IMG/VR virus record: IMGVR_UViG_3300028654_000001
Span: 124,001-188,000 of that record
Length of the DNA: 64,000 bases
Strand: one strand, 5' to 3'
The notes under the pieces were generated by a model. The model did no database searches. It was not told the origin of the DNA and worked only from the letters and a program-made list of their open reading frames with translations. Shown in pieces: positions 19,250-42,061 of this stretch. Each line of letters starts with the position of its first letter. Position 1 is the first letter of the stretch. The position numbers were made by a program, and so were the translations under genes.

Positions 19250-19852
19250 TTATTTGGTCCTAGTAACTTCTACCACCTTGGAGGGGCTTACGGTGACAGT
19301 GAACTTCTTAGGTTTATAGGTTCCGAGGTGAATAGTGTAGCTACCGGGCACGAACTTGTCCGAGAACGTCTCATCGCATATGGACCGATTGGTATTGACG
19401 CGCATACCCTTCCCATGGGCCAGAACGAAGTCGACTGCTACACTCTCTTGAGCCCTCTTCTCACGGTCCTCAACCGTATCCCACAAGTGATAGACCTTCT
19501 TGTCCTGATGGGCAGTCTTGAACTGAGCAGCCGCCTCACAGCAGGCAAGAATGAACTTAATTCGGTTGGTTACTAGATCTAGGTCATCGGATGCTTGACT
19601 CTGGTGACTAACTGTCACCCTTAGGGTGGATTGAAGAAACTCATTCCCAGCCGCATCCTTGATTAGTACCTTCCCAGCACCAAAGGTGACCGTCCACTCA
19701 GCGGTGATAGTGCAATCGGTACCAAACTTTTTGAGAGTAATGTAGGTTGGATAGTCTCGAATCTTCTCAGCTCCATCGATCACTAGTGTTTGGAGTGAGG
19801 TGGCAAGATCAACGTTCGCTTTGGCGAGGTTGTCGAGTTCGAGGTGGGTCAT
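19250..19852 (-). CDS. hypothetical protein, leaderless
   Basis: ATG (MTHLELDN) 5 nt after the class-I -10 element. Confidence 0.8.
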   Translation of the reverse strand: MTHLELDNLAKANVDLATSLQTLVIDGAEKIRDYPTYITLKKFGTDCTITAEWTVTFGAGKVLIKDAAGNEFLQSTLRVTVSHQSQASDDLDLVTNRIKFILACCEAAAQFKTAHQDKKVYHLWDTVEDREKRAQESVAVDFVLAHGKGMRVNTNRSICDETFSDKFVPGSYTIHLGTYKPKKFTVTVSPSKVVEVTRTK

Positions 19853-19857
19853 GTCCT

Positions 19858-19886
19858 GTATTACGTGCAAGTAAGGTTGATCTCAT
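19858..19886 (-). promoter_or_regulatory. class-I promoter motif
   Basis: ATGAGA-N17-TAATAC-N5-ATG. Confidence 0.8.
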
Positions 19887-19972
19887 CAAGTTACCCAATA
19901 AATTAGAACTCCAAAGAAAGTATGTTACGTTTTGGTTATAAGCTGTCACTTTTTACGCGTCAACTCAAGCCC

Positions 19973-20123
19973 TGTCATGGGGTGCTGAGGGGTGTCATGG
20001 GGTGCTGTGAGGCCTGCACGAAATAATACTTTCGGCCTGATTTACTTGGCAACCAGATTTCTTAGGGGTCCTAAAAATCAATGTGCCAAGGTGTGCCGAC
20101 AGGTGCCTGAAATTACTAGGCAC
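19973..20123. repeat. helically phased direct repeats
   Basis: TGTCATGGGGTGCTG at 19973 and 19993; GTGCC at 20083, 20093 and 20103; inverted GGCAC at 20119. Confidence 0.7.
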
Positions 20124-20184
20124 TCTCGATAGCGGGCAACACACCCTAAACCTCTGTATTAACCTTCAACCAATGTAACGAAAC

Positions 20185-20270
20185 GGCCGGCCCTGGGTTA
20201 CAGTCAACGGGAAATCCAAGTACGGATCCTTGGGTACAATAACGAGAACCGCAGATACCCAGGACAGGCC
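20185..20270 (-). ncRNA. candidate structured RNA / long hairpin
   Basis: GGCCGGCCCTGGGT pairs with ACCCAGGACAGGCC; internal CCAAG/CTTGG stem; arms related to 35604-35645. Confidence 0.35.
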
Positions 20271-20371
20271 GCTCATCCTTTTGGCAAAGATCGTCCACCG
20301 ACGTTTGTTTCAATTCACGCCTGTTAGGCGACTATGATCCTATACCCTAAGTAGCCGCAGAGGTCATCATT

Positions 20372-20429
20372 AAAAGAGAACGACCCCTAAGTTCGTGGAT
20401 TTTACCCTGACTTAGAGGTCGTTCAACCT
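20372..20429 (-). terminator. intrinsic terminator, family member 1
   Basis: Minus-strand GAACGACC-U-CUAAGU...ACUUAG-G-GGUCGUUC followed by UCUUUU. Confidence 0.7.
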
Positions 20430-20507
20430 TGCGCTGGGAGCCCTCCCTAACAAGGTATGCTCTCTAACTACAAGAAATCCACAAGAATGGCAAGCGAATA
20501 TTTCTTG

Positions 20508-20536
20508 TTGAGATCCCTCCACTTGAAACGTAGTAT
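20508..20536 (+). promoter_or_regulatory. class-I promoter motif
   Basis: TTGAGA-N17-TAGTAT-N5-ATG. Confidence 0.8.
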
Positions 20537-20541
20537 TGGAC

Positions 20542-20874
20542 ATGAAAATCAAACGAAAGCCACGACAGGTTCTGAGCCCTAAAGAAGGCGACCTTCGGGT
20601 GTGGTGGTGGGTGCCTCAGGTACCTACTAAGTCTTTCACTGTACCTGTTGATTCCATCGAGATGGGTGTATGGATAATGGATATCCTCGCCCAGTATGAT
20701 CTCTTTCAGTACGAGAATCGAATCAAGCCTGACTACAGCAATGCCGGCGGTATTCAACAGTGGTCATTGGACACTGATGGAGAAGGTACCCCAGGATGGG
20801 AAGAGTGGGCAGATCCCGAGACAGGTGAGGATGATCCTCGTAAGTACCTGGAAGATAAGAAAAAGACCAAATAA
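20542..20874 (+). CDS. P22 gp17-like (superinfection-exclusion gene product 17 family) protein
   Basis: LRVWWVPQVP...ILAQYDLFQYENRIKPDYSNAGG matches this family from memory. Confidence 0.8.
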   Translation: MKIKRKPRQVLSPKEGDLRVWWWVPQVPTKSFTVPVDSIEMGVWIMDILAQYDLFQYENRIKPDYSNAGGIQQWSLDTDGEGTPGWEEWADPETGEDDPRKYLEDKKKTK

Positions 20875-20917
20875 CGAAAGGCCTCCTCGGTGTGCGCTGG
20901 CTGCGCGTCAAGGCCAC

Positions 20918-20967
20918 AAAAGGGAACGACCCCCGGAGAAAGGAAAATCCGGAGGTCGCTCGACCTA
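20918..20967 (-). terminator. intrinsic terminator, family member 2
   Basis: GAGCGACC-U-CCGGA...UCCGG-G-GGUCGUUC then CCUUUU; downstream of the 21015-24138 minus-strand train. Confidence 0.75.
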
Positions 20968-21014
20968 TGCCCAAACAACTAACTAACCGATCTTTTGGAG
21001 ATCCGAGTCCCAAC

Positions 21015-21506
21015 CTACTTCAAGTTCAACTGTAAGTCAAGTTCTATTGAGGGGATTGTTACGGGTGGTGGCTCGCCCCAACCAGCATCCACGAAGTCCT
21101 GAACAAAGCTTGAGTCTGGAATGATAGGCTTACCTTTCGTGTTCATGTAGTACTCGCCAGTAACAATTCGGGCTATCGATAACTTGACTGCCTCTTTCAG
21201 GTGTTCGGTAGTCTGTAGTGTAACCCATAAACCCCCGCCCCAAGGCTTCACAAGGCTTCTATGTTGATCAGGAGGATCATAGTCCCCTCGTAAGTCCCAC
21301 TTGGCAAAGTACAACTCGAGGGTTGGTAGATAGACAACCGTGAACATCAAGTACACAGGCTTGGTCTCCACCTTCCCGAACTTAGAGGGCTCTAGTAAGT
21401 CACACAACTTGATCTCACTCGCCAAGCATACCCGGCAGGGTATGTTCTCATCAAGTTTGATCCCTCCTGATCCGATCCCACTCATATGTAAGTCTGCTGT
21501 GTTCAT
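21015..21506 (-). CDS. hypothetical protein
   Basis: ORF track; coupled. Confidence 0.75.
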   Translation of the reverse strand: MNTADLHMSGIGSGGIKLDENIPCRVCLASEIKLCDLLEPSKFGKVETKPVYLMFTVVYLPTLELYFAKWDLRGDYDPPDQHRSLVKPWGGGLWVTLQTTEHLKEAVKLSIARIVTGEYYMNTKGKPIIPDSSFVQDFVDAGWGEPPPVTIPSIELDLQLNLK

Positions 21507-21799
21507 TTTCTACCCTTCTGTGCTTCTTGGAATAAATCGAGTAGGAAGCGCCTGAATCTAGCCCCTTCTTCGTCTGAGATCTCCTCTTGCTCTTGATAGG
21601 AGTCGATTAGTCTGATGAGGCCGGCAAGCAACGGCTCATTCTTCAGAGCTGCCCGCTTGATACTTACGGCTTCCTGAACCCATTGAATGTTGTGTACGGC
21701 AAGAACATTACCGTTTTCATGGGCTTTTAGGCCACGTTCCCAGTCATCAACAGCAACTTCAGCGGCCTTCACAATTTCAGCATCATGGTTGTGTAACAT
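21503..21799 (-). CDS. hypothetical protein
   Basis: ORF track; coupled. Confidence 0.75.
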   Translation of the reverse strand: MLHNHDAEIVKAAEVAVDDWERGLKAHENGNVLAVHNIQWVQEAVSIKRAALKNEPLLAGLIRLIDSYQEQEEISDEEGARFRRFLLDLFQEAQKGRK

Positions 21800-22055
21800 T
21801 TAAAGTCTCCACGAAAGGGATCTCTGGGAAGTAGTAGATCGTGTCACGCCCCAAAGAATCCTCTTTGACGCCTCTAACAGCCTCACAGATGTCTTCTGAG
21901 TTGAGTTCTGTCGTACAGGCCACAGCGGCCATCAACTCACCTAGCGGGGCTACTACGGCCAAGCAAGCCTTACCATACATGTTGCGGCCAGAGTAGGATC
22001 GACACTGAAGACCATCGGCCTCGAGGAGTTGTTGGAGTAGATGTTTTTCACCCAT
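21783..22055 (-). CDS. hypothetical phage protein
   Basis: RSYSGRNMYGKACLAV...DSLGRDTIYYFP motif. Confidence 0.8.
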   Translation of the reverse strand: MGEKHLLQQLLEADGLQCRSYSGRNMYGKACLAVVAPLGELMAAVACTTELNSEDICEAVRGVKEDSLGRDTIYYFPEIPFVETLNVTQP

Positions 22056-22603
22056 TAGGTTCTCCGCTTGTTGGTTTGTTCAAGTTCCCTAGTATCCCCC
22101 TCAAGATCTGGATCTTCCTGCTGGCTTAGTACGGCCTCCCGAGTACCCAAAGACCAAAGAGCTACAATCCCACTCAAGTACCACTCAACTTGATCCCTTG
22201 AATCGTCAAGAATGTCCCCGCAACCGCTTAGAAGGGGTCCTACATAGACACTGGAACAATATGAGGGTACTCTTCTACAGATCTCTTGAAGTTTATCTTC
22301 AAACCCAGCACTTACTTTCTCAGAGGTTAGTACTGTTATACGGCCCTCTCGTTCTCCAATGAATAGGACATTGTGTAGTAATAGTCTAACATATAACTGC
22401 TCGATAATCCAAATGATTTTCTGGTCGTGGTCCTTAGTCCAGATAACAGCGAAGTCATGAAAACTCATCAACGGAACCCAGACAAAAGCTCGAAGAATAG
22501 AGTAGTGAGCCCCACTAGCCAGACCCTCAACTGATGAACTCTCATCATACAGGGTGTTGAAAAACTCAGAGTACTTATGCATGTAGGTAGCGACCTTATA
22601 CAA
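22055..22603 (-). CDS. hypothetical protein
   Basis: ORF track; coupled. Confidence 0.75.
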   Translation of the reverse strand: MYKVATYMHKYSEFFNTLYDESSSVEGLASGAHYSILRAFVWVPLMSFHDFAVIWTKDHDQKIIWIIEQLYVRLLLHNVLFIGEREGRITVLTSEKVSAGFEDKLQEICRRVPSYCSSVYVGPLLSGCGDILDDSRDQVEWYLSGIVALWSLGTREAVLSQQEDPDLEGDTRELEQTNKRRT

Positions 22604-35726: not shown

Positions 35727-36042
35727 TTAGGCCCTAGCTAGGATACCCCGAACGTAAGCTTCACAAGACTTTTTGGCTTCCTCGAGTTCGTTGGTTGGAG
35801 TCTTGTAGGTGTTGGTTAGGGGGATCGGCGGGATAGACTTGTCATCTGAGGCAAGGCTCCCGTAGACCGCAGTCCAGTACCACCCATTGTACTCATTCCA
35901 TCCAGATGAGTTTGCGTACACCCGTCCAACATCAAAGCCATTGACCTTGAGAATAGCACCTCGAGGGGATTGGGTAATGCGTGCCCAACCCTTGCTCATT
36001 GGGCTGCTTTCTCCAAGTGAGCCGGTACTTCTTCTTTGCCAT
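35727..36042 (-). pseudogene. frameshifted paralog of the 36549-37103 C-terminal domain
   Basis: ATG at 36042 gives MAKKKYRLTWRKQPNEQGL; removing one G in GGGTTGGGCACG joins it to ARITQSPRGAILKVNG..., aligning with LVWRPERHEEGLARVIEPPRGANLFANG. Confidence 0.7.
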
Positions 36043-36384: not shown

Positions 36385-36552
36385 ATGAGAGGTGATTGCC
36401 CGCATTGTGGAGGATCTGGAATTGAACCACACCCAGAAGATCCCAACTACGTCCGACCCAACCCATCTCACGAGTGGGACCCTCAACAGCCGGCTTGCCG
36501 TATCTGTGAAGGTCATGGGGAGGAACCGGACCCGTGCGAGTGGGACCCTTAG
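36385..36552 (+). CDS. CxxCxGxG zinc-finger micro-protein
   Basis: CPHCGGSG...CRICEGHG. Confidence 0.7.
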   Translation: MRGDCPHCGGSGIEPHPEDPNYVRPNPSHEWDPQQPACRICEGHGEEPDPCEWDP

Positions 36553-37103
36553 ACTTCTGAGGTCTGACTCGTTGATGTAGCAGCGAGGGCAGGTTTCTGA
36601 ACTGAAGCTGCCCTCGCTTCTTCGAGCTTCTTCTTGACCCAAGCCTTGCACTTAGCCTTGGCAACCTCGAGGTCATCGACCGGGTTTCTACAGGTGTTTG
36701 CTCTGGGGATCCTGAAGGGGAGCTTCTCCGATGGTTCGTTGCCAGCACTCCAGACCCAACCCTTATACTGCGGTGGCTCATCGGCGCCAGACGGGGGCAA
36801 TCGGTAGGAGATGATATTGGCAACCTCCACGCCGTTGGCGAATAGGTTAGCCCCTCGAGGAGGTTCAATGACTCGGGCCAGCCCTTCTTCGTGTCTCTCG
36901 GGTCTCCAAACCAGGAGGATCTTGACGAAGGTAGGAGCCCCTACTCCCCGCTTGCAAGTCCCGCATAGGTCAGGGTCATCCAAGTCGACCTCATCCTTAC
37001 TCACGGGGTGCTCTACATTAACGAGTAATCTCCCACAGAAGGTTCGATTGGCTGTTCGTGGGACGTGCTTCAAGTTCGGGTTGAGGGTCTTCGGCTGGGT
37101 CAT
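36549..37103 (-). CDS. hypothetical two-domain protein
   Basis: N-terminal H...CG...CGTC; C-terminal domain paralogous to 35727-36042. Confidence 0.8.
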   Translation of the reverse strand: MTQPKTLNPNLKHVPRTANRTFCGRLLVNVEHPVSKDEVDLDDPDLCGTCKRGVGAPTFVKILLVWRPERHEEGLARVIEPPRGANLFANGVEVANIISYRLPPSGADEPPQYKGWVWSAGNEPSEKLPFRIPRANTCRNPVDDLEVAKAKCKAWVKKKLEEARAASVQKPALAATSTSQTSEV

Positions 37104-37574: not shown

Positions 37575-37907
37575 TCAGCTATCAGATAACTGCTCTTTCT
37601 TACTTTGACGATATGCTCTCTTGTACGCCCTAGATCTAGTGTTTGAGTCAACTGAGCATCTCCAATTACCATTATCCCTCGAAGTTATCTTTACCACACC
37701 ACAGTTAGTACAAGTGGCAGTTCTAGCTTCAGTGTCTATGTTTGATAAACGATGCTTCCACCGCTTGGTTTGAGATCCAGACTTTAGAGTACCTCGGCGA
37801 AGATATCTATAGTAGCAAGCTACACAAAACCCTCGAGCTCGGACGATCTTACCACACCCTGGGGTTTGGCACACTTCACTGGTTAGTTCAGTTGGTTCTG
37901 ATGGCAC
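37575..37907 (-). pseudogene. truncated HNH-endonuclease-like zinc-binding protein
   Basis: CQTPGC...ARGFCVACY and HRLSNID..ARTATCTNCG...WRC modules typical of phage HNH N-termini; stops before any HNH core. Confidence 0.55.
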
Positions 37908-38061
37908 TCAGTCTTCTTCCTCGAAGTCAAACTTCGATCGGGGTGAGGACTTGAGCTCTTCGTTCTTCGTCCGCCCCTCTTCTTAGCCCTTCGTCTGGGC
38001 TCCCCCATCTCTGGTTCAGGTTCAAAGCTAGTGGGGCCCTGGACGGCCTATATAAACATCA
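37908..38061 (-). pseudogene. decayed copy of the 39016-39195 small gene
   Basis: PTSFEPEPEMGEPRRRAKKRG in one frame, EELKSSPRSKFDFEEED in another; in-frame TAG near the start. Confidence 0.75.
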
Positions 38062-38118
38062 TAGGCTGATCGCTTGCAGTGGACAACAAAGGTGAGCACT
38101 AGAGTAGATACATCAAGG

Positions 38119-38787
38119 TCATAACGGAAAGTCTAGTGGTTCGTCAAGCATCCCAATTGTTGGGGTCTCTGGTGTCACCTGGGTGTTTTGGATTACCTCA
38201 GCGTTACCAGAGACTTGAACCCAATTGATTGTACCATTAAAGTCCAGGTTATTTGATATAGCTTGTAGTCCGACTACCAGGAACATTGGCAGGAATAAAC
38301 CGGACTCAACTCCAGGGGAGATCGCCCAAGGTTGAGCTACCGAATCTCCGACTTGAAGAGCAGCGGTCAGAGCACCTTGAATAGGGCTCTTCAAATTGTA
38401 CGAAAGTCTGATCTTGAGTTGAGTTCCTTGTAGGTTAGCTGGTCCGGAGGGGAGACCCTCTCCAAGTACAGTCCCAGCCCCATCAACGGATAGGTAACCG
38501 AAAGGTCTGTTGATATCATCAAGTGCAATCCCAACAAACTTTGTAGGGTTTGGCCAACAATCCACTAGGAAAGCTACAGAACGGTTTGATCCTGTAGCCC
38601 CTAGAGTGAGTAGGACCTCGAGAGTACCGATGTCAGACAGGGCTAGAGACTGAATAGAGTTAGCTTCAAACACCCCACTGATGAGGAGTCCTGGATTAAC
38701 CAGTGGTCGTACTAGATCCATACTCGACCTAGCATAGTTTATTATGGATACCAGACCAGTTGGATAGTAAATCTTGAATTCAGTCAT
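38119..38787 (-). CDS. beta-rich hypothetical (possible virion protein)
   Basis: 222 aa, MTEFKIYYPTG..., G/S/L/V-rich. Confidence 0.8.
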   Translation of the reverse strand: MTEFKIYYPTGLVSIINYARSSMDLVRPLVNPGLLISGVFEANSIQSLALSDIGTLEVLLTLGATGSNRSVAFLVDCWPNPTKFVGIALDDINRPFGYLSVDGAGTVLGEGLPSGPANLQGTQLKIRLSYNLKSPIQGALTAALQVGDSVAQPWAISPGVESGLFLPMFLVVGLQAISNNLDFNGTINWVQVSGNAEVIQNTQVTPETPTIGMLDEPLDFPL

Positions 38788-38808
38788 GGGTTACTCCTGC
38801 ACCAAACA

Positions 38809-38931
38809 TTAATCACCAACTGGTTGAGTCGGAAAGTTGGTGACACTCTGAACCTAGATGCTAGAATCACCTAACCCAACTGGGGAAGCTAGGGTTGTTG
38901 AAGCTTGATTTGAAAACCGCTCCGTAGTCAT
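38809..38931 (-). pseudogene. N-terminal fragment of the 40453-41979 gene
   Basis: MTTERFSNQASTTLASPVGLGDSSI*VQSVTNFPTQP vs MTTERFSNQASTTLATSVGSGDLSISVQVTTHFPNQP. Confidence 0.85.
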
Positions 38932-38967
38932 ACTTGGAACGGTTCAATAAGAGATTCACCAGGAACT

Positions 38968-39022
38968 AAGTTGAAGGGGACTGATTTTTTTAGTACTCAC
39001 CTGGGAATCAAAAAATCAGTCC
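38968..39022. terminator. 13-bp inverted repeat
   Basis: GGACTGATTTTTT...AAAAAATCAGTCC. Confidence 0.5.
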
Positions 39023-39195
39023 TCTTCTTCGAAGTCTTCGAAGTCAAGCTTTGATCGGATGGATGACTTGAGCTCCCCATCCTCCGTCTCACCCTTTTTC
39101 GGCCGCCCTCGCTTCCTTGCCCTTCGTCTGGGCTCTCCAGTCTCGGGTTCAGGTTCAAAGCTAGTAGGGCACTCTGAAGAAAAGGTGATGCTCAT
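39016..39195 (-). CDS. 59-aa basic/acidic small protein
   Basis: MSITFSSECPTSFEPEPETGEPRRRARKRGRPKKGETEDGELKSSIRSKLDFEDFEEED; AGGAGG-like SD. Confidence 0.75.
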   Translation of the reverse strand: MSITFSSECPTSFEPEPETGEPRRRARKRGRPKKGETEDGELKSSIRSKLDFEDFEEED

Positions 39196-39230
39196 AAGAG
39201 CCTCCTTCTCCTATCTACACCTCATAAAAC

Positions 39231-39280
39231 AAAAAGGGAACGACCCCGGGTAATGCCAAAACCCAGGGTCGTTCAACCTA
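39231..39280 (-). terminator. intrinsic terminator, family member 3
   Basis: GAACGACCC-U-GGGU...ACCC-G-GGGUCGUUC then CCUUUUU. Confidence 0.75.
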
Positions 39281-39538
39281 CTTAGAACAGTCCGCAAGAA
39301 ATGTGACGAAATGACTAACAATCACCAAACAAGACTGTAGCCTACACCACCCTCCAAATCGTGTCAACAGTCAAATTGGATGGTTGACTACCCATGGGTT
39401 CCTCTGTAACTTTATGATCACTCTTTCTTACTTTTTGGATGAGTTCGACTGCAGAGAAGCCCGCCGGTAGTAGTTCCCTGGTGGGCTTCGCCTATTAGGG
39501 CTTTGCACTCCAGAAGCGAAGTAGGTTCTTCACCTCTG

Positions 39539-39634
39539 TCAGATCTGTTGGGGACATGTCGTTGACCAGCAGCTAGTCCAGTAGCTAACCATTGATATCA
39601 GACCCGTAGGGTAGTAGATTTTTAGTTCTGTCAT
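39539..39634 (-). pseudogene. N-terminal fragment of the 38119-38787 gene
   Basis: MTELKIYYPTGLISMVSY vs MTEFKIYYPTGLVSIINY. Confidence 0.8.
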
Positions 39635-39707
39635 GATCACCCTATAGTTTTTGAAAGAAAATTGCGGCCTAGAACAGAGTCTGTGGCTCGGGTGATTGGT
39701 TGTGCTC

Positions 39708-40451
39708 TCACAAACTCACAACACGTGACTTAATGTCAGACGCCACCAACCGAGCCTGTCTATCGAGATCATACTGGCTTAGGTGTATATTACTTGTTAC
39801 TGTGGTGACGTCTAGAGATCCACCGACAATCGATGCATGGGCATCAGCGGCAACCATAGATGCTTGTGCTGCCCGTGCAGCTGGTAGGTAGGTTACATCC
39901 GGTCCAGGTGTATAGCTGTTGCAGAGCTGAATCACAGTCAGATGCAGTGAGGGTATCCCAAGTGCAGATCTGATCGTGGCAACACTGGTAGCAGTATCCG
40001 CCTGCCAAGTACTGGGTGTCCCCTCGTAGAGCATCGCCTCCCCTTGTGACCACACTAGGGTTATACTGCGAGGAGAAATCATGGCCGTCATCCGAGCCGA
40101 GATATATGCTGCCCAGGTGCTTACGACTTCTGCACGAAGATCAGCTGCGTTTATCCCGGGTCGACTGATGGTGCAAATGGACGGCCGAAGCCCAGTATAT
40201 CTCATTTGCGCCGCCAATGACGTAGCCAAATAACCACAAGGGAGCCCGGCTCCAGAAAGTCCCGGTGGGTACTCTTGCCCAGTATGCCACGAGTCGTCTA
40301 TTGAGTAGTTTTGTTGTGACCAGTTCCTATCGTGCTGCTCTCGACTCGGCCACTTCGTTAGCAAATCCCCATAAGGTCCGCAGTTAGACTGACCCACAAC
40401 AAAAACAACGTCACGGTAGTGGTATAGCTCTGAAGCTAGTGCAGTCATCAA
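39708..40451 (-). CDS. SASA/SGNH-family (sialate O-acetylesterase-like) esterase
   Basis: VVGQSN nucleophile motif, LVWSQGE, C-terminal NIH. Confidence 0.8.
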   Translation of the reverse strand: MMTALASELYHYRDVVFVVGQSNCGPYGDLLTKWPSREQHDRNWSQQNYSIDDSWHTGQEYPPGLSGAGLPCGYLATSLAAQMRYTGLRPSICTISRPGINAADLRAEVVSTWAAYISARMTAMISPRSITLVWSQGEAMLYEGTPSTWQADTATSVATIRSALGIPSLHLTVIQLCNSYTPGPDVTYLPAARAAQASMVAADAHASIVGGSLDVTTVTSNIHLSQYDLDRQARLVASDIKSRVVSL

Positions 40452-40452
40452 A

Positions 40453-41979
40453 TCACCAAGCTATCCCTGACATTGTTAGCCAGTGCTGCATTTGTGTGTC
40501 ATCTCCAACTGAGGCCTGAACGCACCATCCGTGCAACACACAGTTGAGATAGTAGCTACCGAACCCAATACCCCACGGATTAGTCAAGATAGCTTGCGCT
40601 ACTCCAGTCACCAAGGACCCAGCCACACCATCGACATAAAGAATCACAGTTGAATTTGTACGACTGACGCGCAGCTCATAATTATGCTTTCCAACGACGC
40701 ATAAACCAACGGGACCCCCGCCAGGTGCAGCCTGCGAGTAACCAACGTTACTCCCGGCTGAGTTGAATCCTGTGGCACAATGAATGCCTACATATTGATT
40801 GGTCCCTGGGCATAAGAACAATAGCTCCCCGGCACCACTAGCCGAAGAAAGTGTCATTGTCCAACGCAAGGTGAAATCTGAAGTAGCTCCCGCTGCTCCC
40901 GCTGCCACACCAGTTACAGCTAAAGCTGTAGTACACGTAACACCTTTCAAAGCGGATGAGTAGGTCCCCTGATGACCAGCAGCAAAAGATAAGTTACGAC
41001 TAGCACCAGATGCATCAGGCCACGTCGGAACCAGGGCACCATCTGCCAGCCCCAGAGTGTCAGCGTAATACAGCTGTTCAGGGCTATCTGCTAGTATAGC
41101 AGCTCTAGCCACAAGCAGCCCGTCCGGTGTCTGGTCATCTGCGGACACGTCTGTCGTGTAAATACGAACATGACCTCGCACATTGAACTTGTATAGTGGG
41201 TCACCACTAATCTGTAGCTCAAGTGAGTTACCATTGGCGACCCATATAGGGTTCCACGTAATGTCCGTGACTTCAAGGGGTATGCCAAGAGATTGCGAGG
41301 TCACAATGAGAGAAGCAGACCCGATTCGATGAGCTGTACAAACCAGTGTGCCAGTCAAGAATTTTTGACCGGCGGCCGAGCACATAAGGTCCACCTCAGC
41401 TCTCACCACTGTGGACGGAGGCACCGGAAACGGAAGACCAGGATTTGACCCAACAACTGTTGTTATAGATACAGGGCCAGATCCGGCGGCGATAAAGGTC
41501 GTGGCCAATGACGCCCCTGAGGGGGTCTCCCAATCAGCAGCAGTCCCACTCGTAGCAGTCAGGACCTGTCCAGGGGTTGGAGCTGCTGCTGAAGAGACTG
41601 AGACTACTGTAGTGGCCGTTCTAATTCCAGAGGCTGTTCGATCATTGGAGAGACGAGAGTCACTGGTCTGAACCGTGTTCTGAGGGATCTCAGCTTCGAT
41701 CTCGGTCCTCAACTCATCGATACCACCTGCGGTCAGCACCCCAATTACTACCGATCCTGCCGCATGAGAGGAATCTGTTGTTCCCTCTACCCCTCTAAGC
41801 ACAGTCCAAGTTGTTCCTGAGATCCCAGTCACCAGCATTAGTTCCTGACCTATTCTGATCCGAAACTCTGGTTGATTAGGGAAATGAGTTGTGACTTGAA
41901 CCGAGATGCTCAAGTCACCAGATCCAACTGAGGTAGCTAATGTGGTTGAGGCTTGATTGGAGAATCTCTCAGTCGTCAT
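40453..41979 (-). CDS. virion-associated/adhesin-like protein with LamG/lectin-like C-terminus
   Basis: 508 aa; N-terminal FRIRIGQELMLVTG..TWTVLRG repeat-like module, T/S/A-rich linker, C-terminal beta-sandwich (VILYVDG). Confidence 0.7.
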   Translation of the reverse strand: MTTERFSNQASTTLATSVGSGDLSISVQVTTHFPNQPEFRIRIGQELMLVTGISGTTWTVLRGVEGTTDSSHAAGSVVIGVLTAGGIDELRTEIEAEIPQNTVQTSDSRLSNDRTASGIRTATTVVSVSSAAAPTPGQVLTATSGTAADWETPSGASLATTFIAAGSGPVSITTVVGSNPGLPFPVPPSTVVRAEVDLMCSAAGQKFLTGTLVCTAHRIGSASLIVTSQSLGIPLEVTDITWNPIWVANGNSLELQISGDPLYKFNVRGHVRIYTTDVSADDQTPDGLLVARAAILADSPEQLYYADTLGLADGALVPTWPDASGASRNLSFAAGHQGTYSSALKGVTCTTALAVTGVAAGAAGATSDFTLRWTMTLSSASGAGELLFLCPGTNQYVGIHCATGFNSAGSNVGYSQAAPGGGPVGLCVVGKHNYELRVSRTNSTVILYVDGVAGSLVTGVAQAILTNPWGIGFGSYYLNCVLHGWCVQASVGDDTQMQHWLTMSGIAW

Positions 41980-42061
41980 GCTGAAGATTCTTTCATAGGA
42001 ACATTATTAGTACTCATCCCTGTGTAAACCACTTCAGTAGTGGTCCGGTGTAGTAGCTTGA

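What the first reader, a model, noticed from the sequence alone, without database searches (positions are those of the whole stretch)
37908..41979. Tandem duplication of a three-gene unit resolved by reciprocal gene loss
Seen, reading the minus strand: copy 1 is T (intact, 40453-41979), SASA esterase, K (fragment, 39539-39634), S (intact, 39016-39195). Copy 2 is T (fragment with internal TAG, 38809-38931), K (intact, 38119-38787), S (frameshifted, 37908-38061). Exactly one intact copy of each gene survives. Inference: duplication-degeneration caught in progress in a probable host-recognition module, with the esterase gained in copy 1 or lost from copy 2.
Basis: partly seen in the sequence, partly recalled or inferred. 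Interest (0 to 1): 0.7.

Follow-up and report, generated by a model that had tools for sequence, protein, structure and literature searches.

The report
Patchwork tail-fibre locus with gene stubs
In a 512-kb phage genome, a host-recognition locus carries broken second copies of three genes; these are leftover ends of already-diverged genes pasted in by recombination, not a fresh tandem duplication decaying in place, which is the ordinary way phage tail-fibre regions evolve.

Summary
The paired segments are real. T 5' ends are 74% identical, S 75%, and K 5' ends about 63-70% over roughly 60 nt. Independent assemblies reproduce the copy-2 junctions and the E-K' and K'-S1 joins.

The tandem-duplication reading is not supported.
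- A syntenic relative (L021) carries only S-K-D between the same flanking genes.
- Against it, the window has three extra pieces:
  - a clean 2.54-kb indel (T1, esterase E, K' stub) inside the intergenic region upstream of S;
  - a T' stub between S1 and K2;
- an S' fragment plus an HNH-like ORF joined, out of frame, to a 22-codon stub of a fourth gene, D (DUF4326).
- All fragments differ from the intact copies mostly at synonymous sites (dN/dS 0.05-0.15). They diverged as working genes and were cut later.
- K' is closer to K of other phages (79-88%) than to K2 next door (63%). A third K stub, 91% identical to K', lies 140 kb away.
- T has five more intact paralogs in the genome.
- S is not linked to T or K in three of its four relatives with context.
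- T1's C-terminal part and E travel together in other phages.

Verdict: an ordinary recombination mosaic of a tail-fibre region, in an unusually large phage.

The parts
40453..41979 (-). T1, intact tail-fibre-like protein (508 aa). Residues 1-~168 are the conserved T-family anchor and linker. Residues ~170-508 are the variable receptor-binding part, with a ConA/LamG-like lead.
   Evidence: ORF. PHROG tail-fibre N-terminal hits. Five further paralogs share the N-terminus. C-terminal lead. Residues 117-508 recur with E in L012 and L013.
39708..40451 (-). E, SASA/SGNH-like carbohydrate acetyl-esterase (247 aa). Unique in the genome.
   Evidence: Pfam PF03629, E 2.6e-4, 21.1 bits, below the 24.8 cut-off. 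A GQSN motif is visible near the N-terminus. Homologs P0010 (71%, carries PF03629) and P0011 (42%) each lie directly after a homolog of T1's C-terminal part.
39578..39641 (-). K' stub: 7 nt upstream plus about 19 codons of a K gene of the L008/P0003 lineage. The ORF then runs on, unrelated, to 39539.
   Evidence: 79% to L008 K and 50/57 to L018 K, against 63% to K2. 42/46 identical to a third stub at genome 22302-22347.
39496..39536 (-). 41-nt element at the inner end of the 2.54-kb extra segment. It is 38/41 identical to a stretch that lies upstream of K in the unrelated 443-kb phage contig L001.
39506..42046 (-). Extra segment 1 (about 2.54 kb: T upstream box, T1, E, K' stub, 41-nt element). 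It is absent from syntenic relative L021 and splits the p84-S intergenic region.
   Evidence: blastn colinearity L021 4195-4457 = window 42303-42047, and L021 4456-4871 = window 39500-39089. Junction alignment.
39196..39505 (-). Ancestral intergenic region upstream of S (homologous to L021 4459-4752). Includes a terminator-like hairpin at 39242-39263.
39016..39195 (-). S1, intact small acidic/basic protein (59 aa) with an AT-hook-like RGRPKK core. This is the resident, syntenic copy.
   Evidence: Homologs P0013-P0015 at 54-64%. L021 S at 65-76% in the same position.
38809..38960 (-). T' stub: the T-family upstream box plus 37 homologous codons. TAG at 38854-38856, TAA at 38809-38811. It is in the same frame as K2 but separated from it by three stops.
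   Evidence: Identical in independent contig L011.
38119..38787 (-). K2, intact K (222 aa). Conserved beta-rich protein with a ConA-like lectin lead. This is the resident, syntenic copy.
   Evidence: Eight full-length homologs at 59-65%. L021 K in the same position. Fold lead only; the AlphaFold model failed with pLDDT 34.
38034..38099 (-). D' stub: the first 22 codons of a DUF4326 gene, 22/22 aa identical to L021 D, with about 12 synonymous differences by my count of the alignment. Cut at ~38036-38040, where S' begins.
37908..38036 (-). S' fragment: S from codon ~10 to its stop. Out of frame with D'. Has a 16-nt deletion that removes the AT-hook and shifts the frame, and a 9-nt deletion.
37575..37907 (-). 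HNH-like zinc-finger ORF (110 aa). Its start overlaps the S' stop. Together with S' it replaces the D body and two further ORFs of L021.
   Evidence: Weak PHROG HNH-endonuclease hits, E 2e-4. No paralog in the genome. No homolog in L021.

Best explanation
The locus is a recombination mosaic of a phage host-recognition region.

The resident, syntenic unit is S1 - (T, now a 37-codon stub) - K2 - (D, now a 22-codon stub).

Two foreign or ectopic pieces that had already diverged as working genes were joined to it by illegitimate recombination:
- A 2.54-kb cassette was inserted into the intergenic region upstream of S1. It carries a fibre gene (T1) and its partner esterase (E), and ends in the first ~19 codons of another K lineage.
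- A piece that starts inside an S gene and carries an HNH-like ORF replaced most of D and two downstream genes.

The resident T was deleted down to its upstream box and 5' end, as happened independently in relatives.

Functional output today: T1 fibre + E esterase, S1, K2. The stubs are inert scars. The T' stub may still supply initiation signals for K2.

Shown: homologies, breakpoints, synteny, substitution patterns.
Inferred: the direction of each event (insertion here rather than deletion in L021) and the protein functions.
For: Synteny and the three extra segments:
-. The joint at D codon 22 | S codon ~10 shows 3-4 nt of microhomology.
- The D stub is 22/22 aa identical to L021 D, with about 12 synonymous changes counted from the alignment. 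Its truncation is therefore recent.

Substitution pattern:
- dN/dS is 0.05 for T', 0.13-0.15 for S', and dN 0.13 with saturated dS for K'.
- Binomial deficit of non-synonymous changes: P 1e-6, 0.013 and 0.006 respectively.

Lineage of the stubs:
- K' is closer to foreign K genes than to K2.
- A twin K stub, 91% identical, lies behind another T paralog.

The T1 C-terminal part + E pair recurs behind different N-termini in L012 and L013.

Recurrent T loss next to K in relatives:
- L021 keeps only the T-type upstream box directly before K.
- L005-7 keep 8 T codons.
- L001-4 keep a frameshifted T.

The relative whose K is closest to K2 (L025, 75% over the first 110 residues, at a contig end) has an intact T followed by K.

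An L001-type phage co-occurs in the same samples, which gives the opportunity for recombination.
Against: - Polarity rests on one syntenic relative. L021 could have lost T1-E-K' by a precise deletion.
- The fragments are short (13-37 codons), so lineage and dN/dS tests have limited power. p values run from 0.006 to 0.013, except for T'.
- S1 and S' are each other's nearest known relatives, which fits a local origin for S'.
- No donor carrying T1-E followed by an intact K, or S followed by the HNH-like ORF, was found.
Confidence: 0.6

Rival explanations
1. Old in-situ tandem array of S-T-K (= T-K-S) units. Both copies stayed functional for a long time, diverged under purifying selection, and were then reduced recently by complementary deletions.
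For: - The colinear order T, K, S / T, K, S.
- S1 and S' are nearest relatives.
- T-K adjacency is conserved in relatives, and the T box before K in L021 suggests an S-T-K ancestor.
- A joint of the form D(1-22)|S(10-end) is formally what a tandem duplication of S..D would create.
Against: - T1-E-K' sits inside, and splits, the intergenic region upstream of S. It is not preceded by a duplicated copy of that region.
- Nothing T-, K- or D-like follows S'.
- S' is promoterless and out of frame from the moment of such a joint, yet shows dN/dS 0.13-0.15 against S1.
- K' and K2 belong to different K lineages.
- Synonymous divergence of the S pair is lower than that of the T and K pairs (p 0.02-0.06).
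Confidence: 0.22
2. Recent tandem duplication now decaying neutrally ('caught in progress'), exactly.
For: The gene order, and the complementary intact and broken states.
Against: - The copies are 25-37% diverged at the nucleotide level, with saturated synonymous sites and dN/dS 0.05-0.15.
- A single S-K-D sits at this site in the syntenic relative.
- The D'|S' joint.
- A strain from another sample is 99.9% identical and carries the same lesions, so there is no polymorphism for intact copies.
Confidence: 0.03
3. The stubs are kept because they work. The T' stub and T box act as promoter or initiation region for K2. The K 5' stubs and T 5' ends serve as conserved homology arms for exchanging fibre cassettes among the T loci.
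For: - A T-type upstream box precedes K in three lineages, with 0, 8 or 37 T codons left.
- Two K stubs at different T loci share 42/46 nt, including 7 nt upstream of the ATG.
Against: - The stub ORFs are not conserved beyond the homologous part, and they end at different codons.
- An invariant Gly of K is changed in the second stub.
- The CTYTATR box is not enriched before other long ORFs.
- No expression data are available.
Confidence: 0.12
4. Assembly artefact: repeats collapsed or chimeric joins in a metagenome assembly.
For: The T 5' end is a six-copy repeat, and Logan contigs break there (41938-41980).
Against: - An independent ENA contig reproduces S1-T'-K2-D'|S'-HNH at 1626/1628.
- Contigs from three other samples span the E-K' and K'-S1 joins and most copy-2 junctions, with 0-4 differences and no alternative joints. 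Depth is an even 60x in the source sample.
Confidence: 0.02

Closest known systems
Mosaic tail-fibre genes of tailed phages: exchange of C-terminal receptor-binding modules behind a conserved N-terminal anchor, as described for P2, Mu, P1, lambda and the T-even phages. This rests on my own knowledge of the classic literature (Haggard-Ljungquist 1992; Sandmeier 1994; Tetart 1998). Recombination hotspots at tail-fibre RBPs in large-genome vibrio phages are reported in PMC12028318.
   Same: - A conserved N-terminal anchor shared by six paralogs, with variable C-terminal parts.
- The C-terminal part plus a partner gene are found behind other anchors in other phages.
- Recombination scars are present.
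   Different: - The scars here are unusually legible: four 5' or 3' stubs from four gene families within 2 kb.
- The genome is 512 kb.
- The partner genes (K, S) have no assigned function.
Fibre plus separately encoded adhesin or chaperone pairs (T4 gp37/gp38; Mu S/U). My own knowledge.
   Same: A small gene (K) is always adjacent to a T-family fibre gene in relatives. K gives a lectin-like fold lead.
   Different: - No sequence or reliable structural match to gp38, Tfa or U.
- The order and orientation of T and K vary.
- The role of K is untested.
Receptor-modifying esterase tailspikes (SGNH/SASA-type deacetylases, as in phage G7C gp63.1). My own knowledge.
   Same: E has a SASA-like match and a GQSN motif, and it is genetically tied to a fibre's receptor-binding part.
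   Different: - E is a free-standing 247-aa protein without a fibre anchor.
- The Pfam score is below the gathering cut-off.
- Activity is untested.
Duplication-degeneration and reciprocal gene loss after duplication (Force 1999; Scannell 2006). My own knowledge.
   Same: Complementary intact and broken copies of paralogs.
   Different: - The copies are not each other's nearest relatives (K).
- The divergence arose under purifying selection.
- The copies are bounded by illegitimate joints, and one lies inside an intergenic region.

Membership tests
Tandem segmental duplication with reciprocal gene loss | Two colinear copies of the same multi-gene unit | tested here: met
   The order T, (E), K, S / T, K, S on the minus strand.
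Tandem segmental duplication with reciprocal gene loss | The two copies of each gene are each other's closest relatives | tested here: not met
   - K' is 79-88% identical to K of L008/L018 and 63% to K2 (12:2 sites, p=0.013).
- T' is 71% to T1 and 74% to paralog g61132.
- Only the S pair meets this.
Tandem segmental duplication with reciprocal gene loss | Relaxed constraint on the decaying copies since the duplication (dN/dS near 1) | tested here: not met
   dN/dS is 0.05-0.15. Deficit of non-synonymous changes: P 1e-6 (T), 0.006 (K), 0.013 (S).
Tandem segmental duplication with reciprocal gene loss | Syntenic relatives carry one copy of the same unit, and the duplication junction is unit-end to unit-start | tested here: not met
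   - L021 carries S-K-D without T or E.
- T1-E-K' splits the intergenic region upstream of S.
- S' (from codon 10) is joined to D codon 22, and nothing T- or K-like follows it.
Mosaic tail-fibre locus (modular exchange by recombination) | A conserved N-terminal anchor with variable C-terminal parts among paralogs | tested here: met
   Six full-length T genes share HMM positions 1-~168 and differ beyond that.
Mosaic tail-fibre locus (modular exchange by recombination) | The same C-terminal module is found behind a different N-terminus in another phage | tested here: met
   L012 (54% over T1 residues 117-508) and L013 (32%), each followed by an E homolog.
Mosaic tail-fibre locus (modular exchange by recombination) | Breakpoints and gene remnants relative to a syntenic relative | tested here: met
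   Three indels with stubs of K, T, D and S. Remnants also occur in relatives.
Mosaic tail-fibre locus (modular exchange by recombination) | The proteins are virion fibre components that bind host receptors | not testable with these tools
   Only homology (PHROG tail-fibre N-terminus) and fold leads.
SASA / SGNH carbohydrate esterase (PF03629), for E | Profile match above the curated cut-off | tested here: inconclusive
   21.1 bits against a cut-off of 24.8, E 2.6e-4. The 71%-identical homolog P0010 carries a precomputed PF03629 hit.
SASA / SGNH carbohydrate esterase (PF03629), for E | A catalytic Ser in a GQSN/GDS-type block near the N-terminus | tested here: met
   GQSN is seen in the translation at about residues 20-23. 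The His/Asp partners were not checked.
AT-hook small DNA-binding proteins, for S | An R-G-R-P core flanked by basic residues | tested here: met
   RKRGRPKKG in S1, and GRGRPRK or PGRPRK in P0013-P0015. The core is removed by the 16-nt deletion in S'. DNA binding is untested.
Invertible tail-fibre segments (Mu G, P1 C, shufflons) | Inverted repeats flanking alternative 3' exons, plus a site-specific invertase | tested here: not met
   T1 and T' are direct repeats, not inverted. No recombinase-family hit among the 9 ORFs of 36.5-42.9 kb that were scanned.

The most novel reading that the evidence does not exclude
The short conserved 5' ends are the ends of a movable fibre cassette. These are the T upstream box plus the first T codons, and the first ~13-19 codons of K with 7 nt upstream. 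In this megaphage group, fibre genes with their partner (E, or a 49-aa ORF) would move between the several T loci and between co-infecting phages as units bounded by these two homology arms. That would be a recombination-based host-range diversification system. The stubs would be its footprints where a cassette landed outside a T-K site.
Probability: 0.1. Interest if true: 0.6.

Novelty: new member of a known kind. Interest (0 to 1): 0.3.

Why it matters
The locus is a clear, breakpoint-level example of how host-recognition regions are rebuilt in very large environmental phages. A fibre-plus-esterase cassette is dropped in whole. Resident genes are trimmed to stubs. The same T-next-to-K decay recurs in several relatives.

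The practical lessons:
- Stubs in such loci should not be annotated as micro-genes, nor read as decaying tandem duplicates.
- K (always beside a T fibre gene) and the T1-C-terminus/E pair are good candidates for experimental work on receptor binding in uncultivated megaphages.

It does not open a new question.

Tried and rejected
- **Alternative genetic code or amber suppression rescuing T'.** A tRNA(CTA) exists at genome 498602-498674. But TAG ends 62 of 276 long ORFs with no excess of downstream open frame. T' has two further in-frame TAA stops before K2.
- **T'-K2 fusion.** They share a frame but are separated by three stops.
- **RNA genes in the gaps.** Nothing credible in Rfam.
- **Searches of the 'phages' collection and IMG/VR with the region or with K.** No match. 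T gives only distant N-terminal hits.
- **AlphaFold model of K from 9 sequences.** It failed (pLDDT 34), so no fold search was run. A profile search of PDB sequences found nothing.
- **CTYTATR box as a general promoter.** It is not enriched before long ORFs.
- **Searching the 443-kb relative as a whole genome.** Not available.
- **Misassembly.** Rejected.
- **Paralogs of the HNH-like ORF near other T loci.** None found.

Full report
**Setting.** The window is bases 124001-188000 of a single 512,571-bp contig. The contig is 49% G+C and has 42 tRNA genes plus a tmRNA clustered at 458-480 kb. This is a very large phage-like genome from a rhizosphere metagenome. ORF statistics give no sign of stop-codon recoding.

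**Observation.** Reading the minus strand, the order is as follows.

| Feature | Window coordinates | Note |
|---|---|---|
| T1 | 41979-40453 | 508 aa, intact |
| E | 40451-39708 | 247 aa, intact |
| K' | ATG at 39634 | stub |
| S1 | 39195-39016 | 59 aa, intact |
| T' | 38931-38809 | stub |
| K2 | 38787-38119 | 222 aa, intact |
| S' | to 37908 | fragment |
| HNH-like ORF | 37907-37575 | intact ORF |

- Self-comparison confirms the paired segments. S is 75% identical (E 5e-22) and the T 5' end 74% (E 7e-14). The K 5' end is homologous for about 19 codons.
- T' has TAG at codon 26, loses homology after codon 37 and ends at a TAA.
- S' has a 16-nt frameshifting deletion that removes its AT-hook, and a 9-nt deletion.
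- An independently assembled contig from another sample is 1626/1628 identical over S1-T'-K2-S'-HNH.
- Contigs from three more samples span the E-K' and K'-S1 joins and most copy-2 junctions, without alternative joints. Only short overlaps bridge the T1-side edge of the 2.54-kb insert, because contigs break at the repeated T 5' end.
- So the sequence is real.

**What the genes are.**
- *T.* It carries a tail-fibre N-terminal domain (PHROGs). It belongs to a family with five further intact members in this genome. These share about 168 N-terminal residues and differ beyond that. T1's C-terminal part gives ConA/LamG-like leads.
- *E.* It is SASA-like, just below the Pfam cut-off, and has a GQSN motif.
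- *K.* It is a conserved 222-226-aa protein with eight homologs at 59-65%. It gives only a lectin-like fold lead; the structure model failed. In the seven distinct relative loci with readable flanks, a T-family gene, T stub or T-type upstream box lies next to K, in varying order and orientation.
- *S.* It is a conserved small protein with an RGRP AT-hook core. In three of its four relatives with context it is not next to T or K.

**Tests of the tandem-duplication reading.**
1. *Substitution pattern.* Against the intact copies, the fragments differ mostly at synonymous sites.
   - T' has dN/dS 0.05, with saturated dS.
   - K' has dN 0.13, with saturated dS.
   - S' has dN/dS 0.13-0.15.
   - The deficit of non-synonymous changes against a neutral expectation has P about 1e-6, 0.006 and 0.013.
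   - The divergence therefore arose while both partners were working genes. Inactivation came late.
2. *Lineage.*
   - K' is 79% identical to K of L008 and 50/57 identical to K of L018, but 63% identical to K2 (12 versus 2 discordant sites, p=0.013).
   - A third K stub lies at genome 22302-22347, behind another T paralog. It is 42/46 identical to K' and is cut at a different codon.
   - T' is as close to paralog g61132 (74%) as to T1 (71%).
3. *The esterase.* Homologs of T1 residues 117-508 and of E lie side by side in two other phage contigs, behind different N-termini and without K or S. E therefore belongs to T1's receptor-binding module.

**The syntenic relative.** A metagenome scan with the K alignment found L021, on a 50,980-nt contig. 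Its flanking genes match those of the window at 70-88% nucleotide identity.

| Locus | Gene order |
|---|---|
| L021 | p107, p84 (opposite strand) \| intergenic region \| S, 50 nt, K, D (DUF4326, 93 aa), two small ORFs, o123-like, o184-like |
| Window | p107, p84 (opposite strand) \| [T1, E, K', 41-nt element] intergenic region, S1, [T'], K2, D' \| [S', HNH-like], o123, o184 |

Relative to L021, the window has three extra segments (in brackets above).
- *(i) Window ~39506-42046.* It holds T1, E, the K' stub and a 41-nt element. It is a clean indel that splits the intergenic region: L021 4458 adjoins 4459, while the window jumps from 42047 to about 39505.
- *(ii) The T' stub between S1 and K2*.
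  - In L021, K sits directly behind a T-type upstream box.
  - L005-7 keep that box plus 8 T codons before K.
  - L001-4 keep a frameshifted T after K.
  - Loss of T next to K has therefore happened repeatedly.
- *(iii) Window 38099-38034, the first 22 codons of D.*
  - It is 22/22 amino acids identical to L021 D, with about a dozen synonymous differences by my count of the alignment.
  - At about 38036-38040 it is joined, through 3-4 nt of microhomology and in another frame, to S' starting at S codon ~10.
  - S' plus the HNH-like ORF replace the D body and two ORFs.

**Interpretation.**
- The resident unit is S1-(T)-K2-(D).
- T1-E-K' and S'-HNH are pieces of already-diverged homologs. They were brought in by illegitimate or ectopic recombination, from other T loci or from co-infecting relatives. 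An L001-type phage is present in the same samples.
- K' and S' were probably never full-length at this site. T' and D' are resident genes that were cut down.
- The apparent T-K-S/T-K-S periodicity results from where these pieces landed.
- The direction of event (i) rests on one relative and on parsimony: one insertion, against a deletion in L021 plus a separate truncation of K here.
- An old array of S-T-K units with long functional coexistence remains possible (about 0.2). It fits the split intergenic region and the out-of-frame, promoterless S' poorly.

**Comparison and novelty.**
- Modular exchange behind a conserved fibre anchor, fibre-partner gene pairs and esterase receptor-modifying enzymes are all established themes. 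This rests on my own knowledge.
- Recombination hotspots at fibre genes of large phages are reported in PMC12028318.
- This locus is a new, well-resolved example of a known kind, in an uncultivated megaphage.
- The only less ordinary possibility is that the conserved T and K 5' ends act as arms of a movable fibre cassette. This is suggested by the twin K stubs and the recurrent T box. It is untested.

Noticed in passing
It is 22/22 aa identical to the intact 93-aa gene after K in L021. The genome has no other copy.
   Followed up: yes
genome 22302-22347 (+), outside the window (about 101.7 kb before its start): A third K 5' stub (13 codons), 42/46 identical to the window's K' stub. It lies after T paralog 19699-22167 and a 49-aa ORF.
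   Followed up: yes
window 39496-39536 (minus strand); L001:7869-7909: A 41-nt element, 38/41 identical between this genome and a 443-kb phage contig whose K protein is only 60% identical.
- In L001 it lies 92-132 nt upstream of K. Here it lies about 98 nt downstream of the K' start.
- It reads as a C-terminal peptide ending ...NLLRFWSAKP, followed by a stop.
- Its nature is unknown.
   Followed up: partly
window 39242-39263 (minus strand); genome 84219-84270: A terminator-like hairpin upstream of S1. It lies in a 52-nt repeat, 87% identical to a second copy elsewhere in the genome, and is also conserved in L021.
   Followed up: partly
upstream of T genes: window 41980-42005 and 38932-38960; L021:4966-5000; L005:7923-7947: A conserved upstream box (CTTATG, about 6-8 nt, CTTCAGC/CAAGT, then ATG) precedes most T-family genes of this genome, the T' stub, the T stub of L005-7 and K of L021. 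A related CTCTTATG overlaps the S start codon. It is not enriched before other long ORFs.
   Followed up: partly
genome 498602-498674 (minus), outside the window: A tRNA with anticodon CTA (amber-reading; ARAGORN calls it Pyl). TAG nevertheless behaves as an ordinary stop in 62 of 276 long ORFs.
   Followed up: partly
L001:8724-9280 (also L002-L004, L024): In the 443-kb relative, the T gene after K is a pseudogene. It is frameshifted near codon 22 and ends near residue 185. The same state is seen in contigs from several samples.
   Followed up: yes
genome about 308.5-315.0 kb and 319.4-323.6 kb (minus): The T N-terminal domain also occurs embedded inside two very long ORFs (2152 and 1410 aa).
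   Followed up: no
window 36549-37103 and 35730-35993: The 184-aa ORF downstream of the locus has a 37%-identical partial paralog about 600 nt further on. L021 shows the same pair.
   Followed up: no
L015:5918-8195 versus genome 59326-64110: A 445-aa gene (73% identical) is followed by an S homolog in relative L015 but by T paralog g61132 in this genome. S and T genes thus occupy the same variable neighbourhoods.
   Followed up: partly
L018:1-22: The public contig starts with Illumina adaptor sequence, so trimming was incomplete.
   Followed up: no
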